Position numbers and translations under genes: made by a program. Source: Haliotis cracherodii (lineage: Eukaryota). From it: a stretch of DNA of 64,000 nt. This document shows positions 2,445-63,925 of the stretch, piece by piece (the stretch's first letter is position 1; each line of letters begins with the position of its first letter). Below the pieces are notes generated by a model, which saw nothing but the letters and a program-made list of their open reading frames with translations, had not been told where the DNA came from and made no database searches. The DNA is taken from the NCBI RefSeq assembly GCF_022045235.1, contig NW_027266343.1:18290001-18354000 (forward strand). The letters are read 5' to 3'.

Positions 2445-2575
2445 NNNNNNNNNNNNNNNNNNNNNNNNNNNNNNNNNNNNNNNNNNNNNNNNNNNNNNNN
2501 NNNNNNNNNNNNNNNNNNNNNNNNNNNNNNNNNNNNNNNNNNNNNNNNNNNNNNNNNNNNNNNNNNNNNNNNNNN
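2445..2575. other. Assembly gap (N run) after a CT repeat
   Basis: N characters. Confidence 0.99.
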
Positions 2576-6109: not shown

Positions 6110-6440
6110 ACCCACCAGCTCCTGCTAGCCTCACCCCTATCTCTGCTAGCCTCACCCCCTCTCCTGCTCACCACACCCCCACCCCTGCTCGCCTAACCCC
6201 CACCCCTGCTAGCCTCAACCCACCAGCTCCTGCTAGCTTCACCCCCACCCCTGCTAGCCTCACCCCCACCCCTGCTAGCATCATCCCCACCCCTGCTAGC
6301 CTCACCCCACCCCTGCTAGCATCACCCCCACCCCTGTGAGCCTCACCCCACCCCTCCTAGCCTCACCCCACCCCTGTTCCTGTTAGACTTACCCCCACCC
6401 CTGCTAGCCTCACCCCCTTCCTAACCCCTGCTAGTTTCAC
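6110..6440. repeat. C-rich ~20-21 bp degenerate minisatellite
   Basis: Repeated CCCCTGCTAGCCTCACCCC(C)A. The complementary strand is G-rich and G4-prone. Confidence 0.85.
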
Positions 6441-6744: not shown

Positions 6745-7398
6745 GACCACGCTACATGCTCAGTGCTGTAGTAGGAGATAAGATACAGGGTGTCTTACGT
6801 GATGACCACGCTACATGCTCAGTGCTGTAGTAGGAGATAAGATACAGGGTGTCTTACGTGATGACCACGCTACATGCTCAGTGCTGTAGTAGGAGATAAG
6901 ATACAGGGTGTCTTACGTGATGACCACACTACAGGCTCAGTGCTGTAGTAGGAGATAAGATACAGGGTGTCTTACGTGATGACCACACTACAGGCTCAGT
7001 TCTGTAGTAGGAGATAAGATACAGGGTGTCTTACGTGATGACCACACTACAGGCTCAGTGCTGTAGTAGGAGATAAGATACAGGGTGTCTTACGTGATGA
7101 CCATGCTACATGCTCAGTGCTGTAGTAGGAGATAAGATACAAGGTGTCTTACGTGATGACCACACTACAGGCTCAGTGCTGTAGTAGGAGATAAGATACA
7201 GGGTGTCTTACGTGATGACCACACTACAGGCTCAGTGCTGTAGTAGGAGATAAGATACAGGGTGTCTTACGTGATGACCACACTACAGGCTCAGTGCTGT
7301 AGTAGGAGATAAGATACAGGGTGTCTTACGTGATGACCACACTACATGCCCAGTGCTGTAGTAGGAGATAAGATACAGGGTGTCTTACGTGATGACCA
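6745..7398. repeat. 59-bp minisatellite, ~11 near-identical copies
   Basis: Unit GACCAC(G/A)CTACA(T/G)GCTCAGTGCTGTAGTAGGAGATAAGATACAGGGTGTCTTACGTGAT. Confidence 0.96.
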
Positions 7399-16339: not shown

Positions 16340-16740
16340 CAGTGCTGAAGCATGACATACGCTTCAATCTGAGCAGAGATGCTGCAGCGTGTACTCAGGG
16401 GTGCTGAAGCATGGGATATGCATCAATCTGAGCATAGATGCTGAAGTGAGGGATACGCATCAATCTGAGCATAGATGCTGAAGTGAGGGATAAACATCAA
16501 TCTGAGCAGAGATGCTGAAGCATTGGATACGCATCAATCTGAGCAGAGATGCTGAAGTGAGGGATACACATAAATCTAAACAGAGATGCTGAAGCATTGG
16601 ATACGCATCAATCTAAACAGGGATGCTGAAGCATTGGATACGCATCAATCTAAACAGGGATGCTGAAGCATTAGATACGCATTAATCTGAGCAGAGATGC
16701 TGAAACGTGTACTCAGAGATGCTGAAGCATGAGATACTCA
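16340..16740. repeat. ~37-bp minisatellite, ~10 copies
   Basis: Unit similar to GCTGAAGCATTGGATACGCATCAATCTGAGCAGAGAT. Confidence 0.88.
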
Positions 16741-17524: not shown

Positions 17525-18135
17525 CTGTTACAGGGAAACTCGGCACCACAGGGTAAGTTGACATAACAAGGAAACATGGCACCACAAGGCAAGTTGACAT
17601 TACAGGGAAACTTGGCAACACAGGGCAAGTTGACATTACAAGGAATCTTGGTACCACAGGGCAAGTTGACATTACAGGGAAACTTGGCAACACAGGGCAA
17701 GTTGACATTACAAGGAATCTTGGTACCACAAGGCAAGTTGACATTACAGGGAAACTTGGCAACACAGGGCAAGTTGACATTACAAGGAATCTTGGTACCA
17801 CAGGGCAAGTTGACGTTAGAAGGAAACTTGGCACCACAGGGAAAAGTTGACATTACAAGGAAACTTGGTACGACAGGGCAAGATGACATCACAAGGAATC
17901 TTGGTACCACAGGGAAAGTTGGCATTACAAGGAAACTTGGCACCACAAGGCAAGTTGACATTACAAGAAATCTTGGTACCATAGAGCAAGTTGACATTAC
18001 AAGGAAACTTGCAATCACAGGACAAATTTTGAAAGGGAAACTTTGCACTATAGGGAATCTTTGCACTATAGGGAATCTTGGCACTATAGGGAATCGTGGC
18101 ACTATAGGGAATCTTGGTGCTACAGGGCTTTGGCA
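17525..18135. repeat. 36-bp minisatellite grading into 18-bp units
   Basis: Unit GGCAAGTTGACATTACAAGGAAACTTGGCACCACAG, then GGGAATCTTGGCACTATA. This explains the repetitive ORFs on both strands. Confidence 0.92.
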
Positions 18136-34834: not shown

Positions 34835-35215
34835 GACCACTTCCATGGTCTAGTGGTAGAGCATCCACCTGGAGAGCGGAAGGTCACGGGTTCAGTCCCC
34901 GGCCCGTCATACCAAAAGACATTAAAAGAAGGTACTTGTTGTGACCCTGCCTGGCGCTCGGCATTAAGGGGCTAAGACAAGGACTGGTCGGCTCGGGAGT
35001 GTATACTTTGCCTGTAACACTATAAAATTGGCATCAGTCNNNNNNNNNNNNNNNNNNNNNNNNNNNNNNNNNNNNNNNNNNNNNNNNNNNNNNNNNNNNN
35101 NNNNNNNNNNNNNNNNNNNNNNNNNNNNNNNNNNNNNNNNNNNNNNNNNNNNNNNNNNNNNNNNNNNNNNNNNNCAATCTTGAAGTTAAATTAAACCCCA
35201 TTTCACCTCACTTCA
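34835..35215 (+). mobile_element. tRNA-derived V-type SINE (interrupted by assembly gap)
   Basis: A box GGTCTAGTGG and B-box-like GGTTCAGTCC, then CGTCATACCAAAAGACATTAAAAGAAGGTAC...CCTGCCTGGCGCTCGGCATTAAGGG, resembling the V-SINE central domain. Confidence 0.72.
35040..35174. other. Assembly gap (N run)
   Basis: N characters. Confidence 0.99.
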
Positions 35216-50149: not shown

Positions 50150-52006
50150 AATTGTCAAAAAAGATGGCAGCATTTGCTGAAAGTTCTGGAAATACATCAA
50201 TAGATAGTGAGCTATCAGGTGGTTTGGAGCTCTCCATTGATGAAAATGGAATCATGTGGGATGATGATCAAGCAGACACGACATATGCCTCAGAAGACCT
50301 GGACTCCTTCCGTCTGAGTCCGTCTGGCAGTGAGACTGCAGGTGATGTGGACTCGTCCTTGCTTCTGTCAGGATCTGGGTCCCAGCCTGCTCCTGCAAAA
50401 GGAGGAGAAGGTCACAGGCAGATGCTGGAGGAGATTGCCGAGACAGATGAGGAGTCATCTTATCAGGGATTACCAGCAGCTCCTTCTAAAGGTCAAAATG
50501 GTGTCAGAATTGGTAAAGGTCATATCGGTGGTAGAGGAACAACTAGTTCAGAGCTGAGGAGAGATAAAGGAGGAATGGTGAGCGATATCATGTCAGTGAG
50601 GGACAAGATGATGAAGTACCTGGAGGAAGATAAGGGAACAAAACCGAAATTCCCAGCCAGTGCCAGAAGCAGAATACAGGAAAAACAGCCAGAAAGAAAA
50701 ACTACTCCGAGCAGGACAAATGAATTGAACAACGGTCAGGGAAAACCATCTTTGCCTGTGTACGAAAAGGACAGGGCACTAGCAGAGAATGGTAATAATA
50801 AAATTCACAATGAATTTAATTCTGAAGCTAACTTCAAGTCTTCGTATGCTTTTGACTCTTCTGATGATCTGTCCTCCAGTAGCTGGTCGCCAGTAAAACC
50901 TACATCAAAGTTTGAAAGGGCAGATTCTATTGATACTGACCATGATGTGATTATCATGGCTCAGGAACCATCAAAAGAAGATTCAAATAAGGCTACAGCA
51001 AGAAAAGTTCCAAAACACAAAGTCATCGTCAGAGATGAAAATGAGGTGGTTGAAGAGATGATCCTACCTAGGTCTAGATCACGCCCTAAAATGTCTCTAG
51101 ACGGTATGTCAAGGAGGCTAGATTTGCTGAGTTCATCCTCTGAATCTCTGAACCTGTCTCCAAGGAGGAAGCCTTTTGTCAAGAAGCGAGAGATAAAAGA
51201 AGTGACTAATCAGGACAAACGGGTCACTCCAGTTCCACAAGATCAGCTGATTTGTGAGCAGCCTAACACAGAACACATTTCTGAAGAGAGACATTGTGAC
51301 AATCCTAAAGATGTGCCAGCTGAGGACCAATACTTGCAGTCATCATTTGCTGATTCAGGAGTCTGTCCTGACACGAAACCTTCTAGACTGTTGGATGATG
51401 TTCAAGTTCCTCCACAGTCAGATGCTATAGACAGTTCTGATGCAATCAAGCCAGATGAAGTGCAGTCCGATGCTATGGACAGCTCTGATGCAATCAAGCA
51501 AGATGAAGTGCAGTCTGATGCTTCGGACAGCCCTGATGCAATCAACCATGATGTAGTGCAAGTTCGGCCTCAGTCAGATGCTATGGACACCCCTGATGCA
51601 GTCAATGTCGATATAGCTGCAGATGATCGTAAGGACAACCTGGGAAGGAAAGGTCAAAGTGTGACTTCCTCACTCAGTTTTGACTCAACGGATGATCTGG
51701 CCAAATATGACAACGTTCCTCTGAAACAGGCCCAGCCTCTTCGAGCCACATTTGCTGATGATGTCACAACTGATGATGAGTTGTCAAGGGATGACATTCT
51801 GGACAAGCCTGGAGGTTCAGCTCCTCCCTACAGAGAGGAGAGCACAGACTTTGATTTTGAATCTGATCTGGAGCGATTCAGTACACCTTTCAAGCTAACC
51901 AGGGGCCATAAGATCTCCAAGAAGAACAAGGTCCTCACCCACAAAAAGGCCCAGCCAAGGGGCGGAAGTGCTAGTCGCAAAAGTGTCCCAAAATTTCATG
52001 TTGATG
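50150..52006 (+). CDS. FBXO41: FBXO41-like exon 6 (1.86-kb acidic/Ser-rich linker exon)
   Basis: Strong acceptor TTTTTCACTTCAG|AA, phase 1. Long open frame. Donor GATG|GTGAGA, phase 1, fits the F-box exon. Confidence 0.85.
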
Positions 52007-53751: not shown

Positions 53752-53806
53752 TTCCTGGTTACCATATCCCAATGGTGTCAACGCCTCCAACATCTCACCC
53801 TAGAAG
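53752..53806 (+). CDS. FBXO41: FBXO41-like exon 8
   Basis: FLVTISQWCQRLQHLTLEG vs FBXO41 FLAMLAQWCTQAHSLTLQN. Acceptor TTGCAG|, donor G|GTCAGT. Confidence 0.92.
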
Positions 53807-59590: not shown

Positions 59591-59651
59591 GATTGCAGTG
59601 CCGACAACGACACAATGAAGAAAGCCTAGAAGAATATCACCGAGCTACCAG
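59591..59651 (+). CDS. FBXO41: FBXO41-like exon 9
   Basis: LQCRQRHNEESLEEYHRATR vs FBXO41 LKPRQRGKKESKEEYARSTR. Acceptor TTTTCTCCAG|, donor AG|GTACAC. Phases consistent. Confidence 0.92.
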
Positions 59652-61754: not shown

Positions 61755-61873
61755 TTTGAAACCAAAGTCTTTCAGCAACAAGTGTTTGTTGCTCATTGCC
61801 AAGTTCTACCCTGATCTTCAGGAGCTTGGAATTGGTGGTCGGGAAATCAGTATCGGAGGACTACTTCCTCTTG
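61755..61873 (+). CDS. FBXO41: FBXO41-like exon 12
   Basis: LKPKSFSNKCLLLIAKFYPDLQELGIGGREISIGGLLPL vs FBXO41 QPTRFSNRCLQMIGRCWPHLRALGVGGAGCGVQGLASL. Donor G|GTGAGT, phase 1. Confidence 0.94.
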
Positions 61874-62419
61874 GTGAGTTCACTGTGTGACACTATGTAC
61901 ATACAGACTGGGAGGGAGACAGTAGTTCAGTAGCAGACCTCTCACTGTAACCAATTACATCTACTCTGCAAACCTGTGGCTGGTCATATTGTACAACAGA
62001 ATGAAGAATGCCCATACTGTATTCACAGGACCTGATGTTATTTAGGTATGGCCACCATGGCTGCCATTTTGTATGTGGCACCTTATTCTCATAGCTCAGG
62101 CATTCCTTTGTGTATCTTGAGGAAAAAGTGACATGCAGGAAATATGTGGTCAGTAATGAGTGATCATCAGGAAGGTTTTTTTCTGAATAAAAGGGTCGGG
62201 ACTAACAAGGATAATATATATCAGTTTTATTAGTACACAGTTTAAAAAAATGCTAAGAAAATTGAAATGGAATACCTTGAAAACACTATTTTTTATTGTA
62301 CAAATGGAAATGTTTTGTGTTTACCACAAAGCAGTTGTGCATACAATAGTTTAGACCAGTATTTTTCAAAAAGTCTGGAATCCAGGAAATGAAAAACAAT
62401 TCCTGAGCAATGTTGAGTA

Positions 62420-63925
62420 TAAAGTACAACAAGTGTATCTATATTTTAGTTAAAGGTTGTCAAGGTTAAGTACAAGTGTATCTATATTTTAGTTCAGGGT
62501 TCTCAAGGTAAAGTACAAATGTATATATATTTTAGTTCAAGGTTGTCAGGGTAAAGTACAAATGTATATATATTTTAGTTCAAGGTTGTCAGGGTAAAGT
62601 ACAAGTGTATCTATATTTTAGTTAAAGGTTGTCAAGGTTAAGTACAAGTGTATCTATATTTTAGTTCAGGGTTGTCAGGGTAAAGTACAAGTGTATCTAT
62701 GTTTTAGTTCAGGGTTCTCAAGGTAAAGTACAAATGTATCTATATTTTAGTTCAGGGTTCTCAAGGTAAAGTACAGGTGTATCTATATTTTAGTTCAAGG
62801 TTGTCAAGGTAAAGTACAAGTGTATCTATATTTTAGTTCAAGGTTGTCAAGGTAAAGTACAAGTGTATCTATATTTTAGTTCAAGGTTGTCAGGGTAAAG
62901 TACAAGTGTATCTATATTTTAGTTCAAGGTTGTCAAGGTAAAGTACAAGTGTATCTATATTTTAGTTCAGGGTTATCAAGGTAAAGTACAGGTGTATCTA
63001 TATTTTAGTTCAAGGTTGTCAAGGTAAAGTACAAGTGTATCTATATTTTAGTTCAAGGTTGTCAAGGTAAAGTACAAGTGTATCTATATTTTAGTTCAAG
63101 GTTGTCAGGGTAAAGTACAAGTGTATCTATATTTTAGTTCAAGGTTGTCAGGGTAAAGTACAAGTGTATCTATATTTTAGTTCAAGGTTGTCAAGGTAAA
63201 GTACAAGTGTATCTATATTTTAGTTCAAGGTTGTCAAGGTAAAGTACAAGTGTATCTATATTTTAGTTCAAGGTTGTCAAGGTTAAGTACAAGTGTATCT
63301 ATATTTTAGTTCAAGGTTGTCAAGGTAAAGTACAAGTGTATCTATATTTTAGTTCAAGGTTGTCAAGGTAAAGTACAAGTGTATCTATATTTTAGTTCAA
63401 GGTTGTCAGGGTAAAGTACAAGTGTATCTATATTTTAGTTCAAGGTTGTCAAGGTTAAGTACAAGTGTATCTATATTTTAGTTCAGGGTTGTCAGGGTAA
63501 AGTACAAGTGTATCTATATTTTAGTTCAAGGTTGTCAGGGTAAAGTACAAGTGTATCTATATTTTAGTTCAAGGTTGTCAAGGTAAAGTACAAGTGTATC
63601 TATATTTTAGTTCAAGGTTGTCAAGGTAAAGTACAAGTGTATCTATATTTTAGTTCAAGGTTGTCAAGGTAAAGTACAAGTGTATCTATATTTTAGTTCA
63701 AGGTTGTCCAGGTAAAGTACAAGTGTATCTATATTTTAGTTCAGGGTTGTCCAGGTAAAGTACAAGTGTATCTATATTTTAGTTCAAGGTTGTCCAGGTA
63801 AAGTACAAGTGTATCTATATTTTAGTTCAGGGTTGTCCAGGTAAAGTACAAGTGTATCTATATTTTAGTTCAAGGTTGTCAAGGTAAAGTACAAGTGTAT
63901 CTATGTTTTAGTTCAAGGTTGTCAG
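62420..63925 (+). repeat. 43-bp minisatellite, ~35 copies, derived from the FBXO41 intron12/exon13 boundary
   Basis: Unit GTAAAGTACAAGTGTATCTATATTTTAG-TTCAAGGTTGTCAAG. The last copy supplies the real acceptor and first codons of exon 13. Confidence 0.97.

What the first reader, a model, noticed from the sequence alone, without database searches (positions are those of the whole stretch)
62420..63925. Tandem array of ~35 duplicated splice acceptors forming a potential in-frame microexon cassette in FBXO41
Seen: each 43-bp unit is 28 nt of GTAAAG...TATTTTAG followed by 15 nt of TTCAAGGTTGTCAAG. Those 15 nt are a near-copy of the start of exon 13, and the repeat junction creates a new donor AG|GTAAAG (variants GG|GTAAAG, AG|GTTAAG). 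Every unit therefore looks like a phase-1-symmetric 15-nt microexon. All variants I read are stop-free (VQGCQ, VKGCQ, VQGSQ, VQGYQ, VQGCP). Read-through from an internal acceptor shifts frame and meets a stop, typically TAA in the next unit. Only the last acceptor, or microexon splicing, gives protein. Established: tandem duplication across an AG|GT site is a proposed mechanism of intron gain. Inference: the cell must either select the most distal of ~35 near-identical acceptors, remove the array stepwise, or include variable numbers of 5-aa modules in the LRR region. The 28-nt spacers are too short to splice on their own, but skipping units gives 71- or 114-nt introns.
Basis: partly seen in the sequence, partly recalled or inferred. 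Interest (0 to 1): 0.85.

Follow-up and report, generated by a model that had tools for sequence, protein, structure and literature searches.

The report
Splice-acceptor "mirage" minisatellite in abalone intron
The last 1.5 kb of one intron of a black-abalone FBXO41-like gene consists of 34 extra head-to-tail copies of that intron's own end plus the first 14 bases of the next exon; this repeat type ("mirage" minisatellite) is already known, and nothing shows that the copies are used as coding mini-exons.

Summary
Window 62420-63925 holds a 43-bp x 34.8 tandem array (96% identity, no indels). It has 35 TTTTAG acceptors spaced exactly 43 nt apart. The last one (exon start 63912) is the annotated acceptor of coding exon 13.

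The genome is Haliotis cracherodii. Its own 2350-aa protein model maps at 100% and joins 61873 directly to 63912, giving a single VQGCQ. Models from three other abalones and five other gastropod genera show the same single junction. No annotated isoform carries extra 5-aa modules.

Two H. rufescens RefSeq isoforms (X2, X3) end inside the orthologous array. Their tails are what read-through from an internal acceptor predicts. So the array exists in the sister species, and internal acceptors may be used unproductively.

The stop-free "microexons" carry no signal of constraint. Only 3 of 45 single substitutions would create a stop, and the exon-like part is more variable than the intron part.

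This is a "mirage" minisatellite, as in amphioxus Adh3, globin and PGBD5 genes, and the mirror image of the human F7 intron-7 VNTR. The scan has already noted this repeat type at 17 other places in this genome. No RNA reads could be obtained. It is a new member of a known kind, of modest interest.

The parts
61755..61873 (+). Coding exon 12 of the FBXO41-like gene (…GREISIGGLLPL, ends in phase 1); real donor TTG|GTGAGT
   Evidence: Exact mapping of the own protein P0069 residues 2200-2238, and a unique GT/AG solution
61874..63911 (+). Intron 12, 2038 nt; unique sequence to 62419, then the array
   Evidence: no degenerate units upstream of 62420
62420..63925 (+). 43-bp x 34.8 'mirage' minisatellite; each unit is 28 nt of intron end (with TTTTAG acceptor) plus a 15-nt copy of the exon start, and the junction forms AG|GTAAAG
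   Evidence: TRF; unit table with 15 distinct unit types, the 5' units most diverged; unique in the genome
62450..63883 (+). 34 internal pseudo-acceptor / 15-nt pseudo-exon / pseudo-donor modules (first at 62450-62464, last at 63869-63883)
   Evidence: all are stop-free in phase 1, and all read through to a stop within 6-34 codons
63912..64000 (+). Start of coding exon 13 (VQGCQRLQYLELDHM…); the exon runs to 64070, beyond the window (L010:112-270); the genuine acceptor is the 35th and last TTTTAG
   Evidence: P0069 residues 2239-2291 map here; downstream DNA

Best explanation
This is an intronic minisatellite of the 'mirage' type. A 43-bp segment spanning the 3' end of intron 12 and the first 14 nt of exon 13 of a black-abalone FBXO41-like gene was duplicated in tandem. 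It then expanded by slippage or unequal exchange to about 35 copies (inferred). The array is a by-product of repeat dynamics and is not a coding device. Productive mRNA comes from splicing exon 12 to the last acceptor, the only copy followed by a normal 159-nt exon with its own strong donor. I infer that exon definition makes this choice. Each internal acceptor is followed after only 15 nt by a donor-like site. That is too close for a normal exon-definition complex, and it leaves 28-nt spacers that are too short to be introns. The 34 internal copies act as decoys. When one is used, the transcript reads into the next unit, meets a stop within 6-34 codons, and is probably degraded or yields a protein lacking the last ~110 residues of the LRR domain.
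For: The array and its register are shown. The own-species protein P0069 sits on a contig of 60,096,789 nt, the same length as the window's contig. It maps at 100% and joins 61873|63912. The same single LLPL-VQGCQ/VSGCQ/VQSCQ junction is seen in H. rufescens X1, H. rubra, H. asinina, Patella, Littorina, Nucella, Babylonia and Batillaria. H. rufescens isoforms X2 and X3 are identical to X1 up to residue 2232/2233. They then end in 20-residue tails (…VQGCHGKVQVYLYFSSRLSR, …VQGCQGKVQVYIYFSSKLSR). These match the commonest read-through tail predicted from the window's array, which 10 units give. The exon-like part shows no constraint. The pseudo-donors match the consensus at 5-7 of 9 positions, like the gene's real donors at 4-8 of 9, and the shortest real intron is 117 nt. 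No RNA structure hides the copies (z = +2.1). Minisatellites are frequent in this window. The class is published: amphioxus mirages do not disturb normal splicing (PMC3087553, PMC3902484), and in the human F7 VNTR only the site next to the exon is used (PMC1557585). Microexons are hard for the splicing machinery (PMC8378409, PMC12871342).
Against: All transcript evidence is therefore annotation-level. The X2/X3 models could be artefacts. A spliced read with 14 nt or less past the junction fits all 35 acceptors equally, and pre-mRNA reads cover the array. Annotation pipelines rarely-nt exons inside repeats, so the absence of microexon isoforms is weak evidence. The exon-definition explanation for choosing the last copy is inferred and was not tested.
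Confidence: 0.8

Rival explanations
1. Microexon cassette. Some transcripts include one or more 15-nt units, using 71- or 114-nt introns that skip units. This would insert a variable number of VQGCQ-like modules before the LRR encoded by exon 13.
For: All 34 units are phase-1 symmetric and stop-free, with plausible acceptor and donor motifs. 71-nt introns are physically possible. Annotation would easily miss such exons.
Against: No isoform with extra modules is annotated in four Haliotis species. Freedom from stops is expected by chance, and the exon-like part varies more than the intron part, with Gln to Pro, Cys to Ser/Tyr and Gln to Lys changes. The unit has no UGC motif (consensus). Every gastropod orthologue has exactly one module.
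Confidence: 0.05
2. Functional decoy array. Copy number tunes the output of the gene by diverting part of the pre-mRNA to internal acceptors and nonsense-mediated decay, or to a truncated protein that keeps the F-box but has a shortened LRR.
For: H. rufescens X2/X3 models end inside the array. The array is shared by two species.
Against: The scan's earlier, unchecked notes report many such arrays in unrelated genes of this genome, which points to a mutational process and away from gene-specific regulation. There is no sign of sequence constraint. X2/X3 may be alignment artefacts.
Confidence: 0.07
3. Stepwise (recursive) removal. The AG that ends each 15-nt piece is directly followed by GTAAAG. 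Splicing of exon 12 to that AG would regenerate a donor (TTG|GTAAAG), so the array could be removed in steps without leaving a trace in the mRNA.
For: AG|GT juxtaposition occurs in every unit. The end product would be the same as the annotated mRNA.
Against: The intron is only 2 kb, whereas known recursive sites lie in very long introns (my own knowledge). The AG in question sits 15 nt behind a better-placed TTTTAG and after a purine-rich stretch. No lariat or intermediate data exist.
Confidence: 0.06
4. Assembly artefact: the array, or its copy number, is produced by misassembly.
For: Repeats are error-prone in assemblies, and reads could not be inspected.
Against: The 15 distinct unit types lie in a non-periodic order with no indels. 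Independent evidence for homologous units comes from the H. rufescens assembly, through the X2/X3 tails, which have their own variants.
Confidence: 0.02

Closest known systems
[quoted passage not shown] 2002 NAR 30:2871, cited there, not held in the library)
   Same: It is a tandem array whose unit spans an exon-intron boundary and so copies the splice site plus the exon edge. It lies in the adjoining intron. The edge units are the most diverged. The genuine copy next to the exon gives the normal mRNA. BflGb6 is likewise a 3'-splice-site case.
   Different: It is in a mollusc, not a cephalochordate. It has 35 copies against 3-6 in BflGb6. The 43-bp unit happens to give phase-symmetric 15-nt pseudo-exons with a donor-like junction. 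In the sister species two annotated isoforms end inside the array, whereas the lancelet mirages are reported not to give aberrant mRNAs.
Human F7 intron 7 37-bp VNTR, whose first unit spans the exon 7/intron 7 boundary (PMC1557585)
   Same: A natural minisatellite supplies several identical splice sites, and only the one adjoining the real exon is used. The pseudo-sites are functional in principle.
   Different: F7 duplicates the donor (5-9 copies), while here the acceptor is duplicated (35 copies). For F7 the choice was tested with 50 constructs, whereas here nothing has been tested experimentally.
Intron gain by tandem duplication of an exonic AGGT segment (Rogers model; Hellsten et al. 2011, PMC3265369; potato RdRp, PMC4974935)
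   Same: A tandem duplication creates extra splice signals, and mRNA integrity is kept if the outer sites are used.
   Different: No intron is gained here. The intron pre-exists, and the duplication spans an existing 3' splice site and lengthens the intron.
Regulated neural microexons (3-27 nt; PMC8378409, PMC12871342)
   Same: The size (15 nt), the preserved frame and a probably neuronal host gene family all fit.
   Different: There is no evidence of inclusion, no conservation and no UGC motif. The spacers are 28 nt, and the pieces evolve without constraint.

Membership tests
Mirage minisatellite (splice-junction minisatellite) | Head-to-tail array with a minisatellite-sized unit | tested here: met
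   43 bp x 34.8 copies, 96% identity, no indels
Mirage minisatellite (splice-junction minisatellite) | The unit spans a real exon-intron boundary and so copies the splice site plus the exon edge | tested here: met
   The last unit runs into the real exon. The boundary 63911|63912 is fixed by exact mapping of the own protein P0069. 14 nt of exon and 27-29 nt of intron are copied.
Mirage minisatellite (splice-junction minisatellite) | The array lies in the adjoining intron, with the genuine site at the end next to the exon | tested here: met
Mirage minisatellite (splice-junction minisatellite) | Normal mRNA is still made from the genuine copy | tested here: inconclusive
   The own-species and orthologue protein models use the last acceptor, but no reads were available. 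H. rufescens X2/X3 models end inside the array.
Mirage minisatellite (splice-junction minisatellite) | Length instability or polymorphism | not testable with these tools
   Only one assembly was accessible. H. rufescens units carry variants not seen here, which fits turnover.
Regulated microexon cassette | Inclusion in transcripts | tested here: not met
   No annotated isoform with extra VQGCQ modules in H. cracherodii, H. rufescens, H. rubra or H. asinina. This is annotation-level evidence only.
Regulated microexon cassette | Purifying selection or conservation of the exon | tested here: not met
   5 of 15 exon-like positions vary against 5 of 28 intron positions. There are 4 non-synonymous and 2 synonymous variant types. 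Orthologues have one module.
Regulated microexon cassette | Flanking introns long enough to splice, and a UGC motif upstream | tested here: not met
   28-nt spacers against a shortest real intron of 117 nt. There is no TGC in the unit consensus.
Intron gain by tandem duplication across AG|GT | A new intron arises between duplicated exonic copies and is absent in relatives | tested here: not met
   Genomic ORF fragments of other gastropods lose homology exactly before VQSCQ/QNCQ (P0003-P0005, P0008), so the intron position is shared. The duplication covers an existing acceptor.
Recursive splice site | A 3' splice site directly abutting a regenerated 5' splice site, used as an intermediate in a long intron | not testable with these tools
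   The AG|GTAAAG motif is present in every unit, but the intron is only 2 kb and no intermediate or lariat data exist.
FBXO41-like F-box protein | FBX41-type C2H2 zinc finger, coiled coil, F-box and C-terminal LRR | tested here: met
   PF23165 scores 32.1 bits against a cut-off of 24. PF00646/PF12937 are precomputed on the orthologues. The protein is 2350 aa and RefSeq names it only 'uncharacterized protein'.

The most novel reading that the evidence does not exclude
The array is a copy-number-dependent splicing rheostat. Internal acceptors capture a share of the pre-mRNA, as the two H. rufescens isoforms that end inside the array suggest. Array length, which can change quickly, would then set how much full-length FBXO41-like ligase is made. 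Alternatively, a few in-frame 5-aa modules are occasionally included. Either case would make a minisatellite a heritable, fast-mutating control on splicing outcome in a mollusc neuron gene.
Probability: 0.08. Interest if true: 0.6.

Novelty: new member of a known kind. Interest (0 to 1): 0.3.

Why it matters
The locus is a natural experiment in 3' splice-site choice. It offers 35 acceptors with nearly identical polypyrimidine tract, AG and first 14 exon bases, of which one must be chosen, so the discriminating signal must lie more than 14 nt downstream. It is the acceptor-side counterpart of the well-studied human F7 donor VNTR, with many more copies, and it suits minigene work on exon definition. 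It also warns annotators that spliced reads with short overhangs fit every copy, so models such as H. rufescens X2/X3 need checking. As biology it adds one more case to a repeat class already described in lancelets, and, according to the scan's earlier unchecked notes, already seen many times in this abalone genome.

Tried and rejected

The age of the array beyond the H. cracherodii/H. rufescens pair is unknown.

(3) I searched with the stop-free stretch around exon 12 for short transcript-derived protein fragments that would show what follows LLPL. Nothing was found. This says nothing about longer fragments.

(4) I looked for an RNA structure that could mask the internal acceptors. The last five units plus the exon fold worse than shuffles (z = +2.1), so I rejected this idea.

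(5) I looked for older, decayed units upstream of 62420. None scored above shuffled controls.

(6) I checked whether the repeat is a dispersed family. It matches only itself in the 1.18-Gb genome.

(7) I rejected intron gain by AGGT duplication, because the intron position is shared with other gastropods.

Exons were searched by reference, and full-length comparisons used proteins returned by the databases. Exon ends were joined only in a local script, over about 30 nt on each side, to fix the splice borders against P0069.

(9) The N runs at 2445-2575 and 35040-35174 were left alone.

Full report
**Observation**

The sequence from 62420 to 63925 is a clean tandem array. Tandem Repeats Finder gives period 43, 34.8 copies, 96% matches, no indels and score 2712.

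- I anchored on TTTTAG and found 35 such sites exactly 43 nt apart.
- Each unit has 28 nt that begin GTAAAG (GTTAAG in five units) and end TTTTAG.
- These are followed by 15 nt, TTCAAGGTTGTCAAG or a variant.
- The last unit continues into the real exon (TTCAAGGTTGTCAG|CGCC…), so 14 nt of exon are part of the repeat.
- In phase 1 the 15-nt pieces read VQGCQ, VKGCQ, VQGSQ, VQGYQ or VQGCP, with no stop.
- Reading through from any of the 34 internal acceptors ends at a stop after 6-34 codons. The commonest tail is VQGCQGKVQVYLYFSSRLSR, given by 10 units.
- The array matches nothing else in the 1.18-Gb genome.
- No decayed units lie upstream of 62420.

**Gene and species**

The window is G000:C80:18290001-18354000, on a contig of 60,096,789 nt.

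A search with the translation of exon 13 found a 2320-aa Haliotis asinina protein at 94% identity. A second search found H. rubra, H. rufescens and other gastropod orthologues. The 90% cluster of the H. rufescens protein holds two proteins that lie on a contig of exactly 60,096,789 nt. One of them is named Haliotis cracherodii isoform X2.

The other, P0069 (2350 aa), maps at 100% identity onto the window plus 10 kb downstream, in 15 coding blocks. So the window is from black abalone and P0069 is its own gene model.

Unique GT/AG solutions place intron 12 at 61874-63911 (2038 nt) and exon 13 at 63912-64070.

The protein has the Pfam FBX41-type zinc finger above its cut-off, an F-box and a C-terminal LRR. 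'FBXO41-like' is a fair name, although RefSeq calls it uncharacterized.

**What the transcript models say**

P0069 joins …GGLLPL directly to VQGCQRLQYLELDHM…, so it uses the last acceptor. The same single junction appears in H. rufescens X1 (P0067), H. rubra, H. asinina, Patella, Littorina, Nucella, Babylonia and Batillaria. No model anywhere has a second VQGCQ-like module.

Two H. rufescens RefSeq isoforms behave differently. X2 (XP_048249488.1) and X3 (XP_048249489.1) are identical to X1 up to residue 2232/2233. They then end …VQGCHGKVQVYLYFSSRLSR and …VQGCQGKVQVYIYFSSKLSR. These are the read-through tails predicted from array units, each with variants of its own.

Two things follow:

- H. 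rufescens has a homologous array. This is independent support that the array is real and predates the split of the two species, whose proteins are 96.7% identical.
- The annotation pipeline had some reason to model splicing to two different internal acceptors.

I could not see the evidence behind these models. A spliced read with 14 nt or less beyond the junction fits all 35 acceptors, and pre-mRNA reads cover the array. The models may therefore be alignment artefacts. I treat them as a hint of unproductive use of internal acceptors, not as proof.

**Is the pseudo-exon under constraint?**

There is no sign of constraint.

| Part of unit | Variable positions |
|---|---|
| Intron part | 5 of 28 |
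| Exon-like part | 5 of 15 |

The six variant types in the exon-like part are four non-synonymous (Gln to Lys, Cys to Ser, Cys to Tyr, Gln to Pro) and two synonymous.

Only 3 of the 45 possible single substitutions in the 15 nt create a stop. With six variant types the chance of seeing no stop is about two in three. Freedom from stops is therefore not a signal.

The 5' units are the most diverged, and the middle and 3' units are homogenised. This is the usual minisatellite pattern.

**Splice-signal context**

- The pseudo-donors match CAG|GTAAGT at 5-7 of 9 positions. The gene's 14 real donors match at 4-8 of 9.
- The acceptor is of the TAG type, like only one other of the gene's 14 real acceptors (the remaining 12 use CAG), with middling pyrimidine content.
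- The shortest real intron of the gene is 117 nt, so the 28-nt spacers cannot be introns.
- The unit has no TGC (consensus). From my own knowledge, UGC is the motif of regulated neural microexons.
- The last five units plus the exon fold worse than shuffled sequence (z = +2.1), so no structure hides the copies.

The real acceptor and the internal copies share the polypyrimidine tract, the AG and the next 14 nt. What distinguishes them must lie further downstream. The real one has a 159-nt exon body and the donor ACA|GTAAGT. The copies have a donor-like site after 15 nt.

I infer that exon definition picks the last copy and that donor proximity suppresses the others. Published work states that microexons are hard for the splicing machinery (PMC8378409, PMC12871342).

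**Comparison with known systems**

The literature search turned up the class.

[quoted passage not shown] They were later found in amphioxus globin, troponin C and PGBD5 genes.
- BflGb6 is a 3'-splice-site case with 3-6 units. Normal splicing is reported to be undisturbed, although the copies could serve as cryptic sites (PMC3087553; PMC3902484).
- The human F7 intron-7 37-bp VNTR is the donor-side counterpart. It offers five to nine identical donors, and only the one next to the exon is used (PMC1557585).
- Intron gain by duplication of an AGGT segment (PMC3265369) is a different process. Here the intron already exists. Genomic ORF fragments of other gastropods lose homology exactly before VQSCQ/QNCQ.

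After I had reached this reading, the scan's notebook showed 17 earlier notes on 'mirage' arrays elsewhere in this same genome. The scan has therefore found this kind before on other DNA. Those notes are unchecked by me. They agree with my reading and suggest a genome-wide mutational tendency.

The window itself is rich in minisatellites, though no other array in it touches an exon border of this gene.

**Verdict**

The array is real and is correctly described. It is a new member of a known kind.

- The microexon-cassette reading is unsupported (about 5%).
- A regulatory decoy role (about 7%) and stepwise removal (about 6%) cannot be excluded without RNA data.
- This locus adds two things: an unusually high number of acceptor copies in perfect register, and the annotated sister-species isoforms that end inside the array.

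**Limits**

- A search for short transcript-derived fragments found nothing.

Noticed in passing
window 59591-59651 (coding exon 9) and 53752-53806 (exon 8): The species' annotated isoform X2 (P0068, XP_071089603.1, 2089 aa) ends …NERISSSDCSADNDTMKKA. That tail is exon 9 read in another frame. It fits skipping of the 55-nt exon 8, which would give a protein that stops just after the F-box.
   Followed up: partly
window 51415-51560: A 48-bp x 3 tandem repeat lies inside the large coding exon 6. It encodes repeated QSDAMDSSDAIKQDEV-like peptides in the disordered middle of the protein.
   Followed up: no
window 6745-7398, 16402-16704, 17528-18025, 6110-6417: Further minisatellites lie upstream of the gene: 59 bp x 11 at 97% identity, 37 bp x 8, 36 bp x 14 and 21 bp x 14. 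The window carries about nine minisatellite loci in 64 kb.
   Followed up: no
L010:560-800 and L010:1290-1460 (about 360-600 and 1090-1260 nt beyond the window end): Two copies of a SINE-like element with a tRNA-like core and a CACTCACTCACTCA tail lie downstream of exon 13, in introns 13 and 14.
   Followed up: no
window 62420-63925 compared with H. rufescens P0062/P0070: The H. rufescens array carries unit variants absent from this array (His in place of Gln at the fifth codon; an Ile/Lys variant pair). This points to rapid turnover since the two species split.
   Followed up: partly
window 2445-2575 and 35040-35174: Two runs of N (131 and 135 nt).
   Followed up: no
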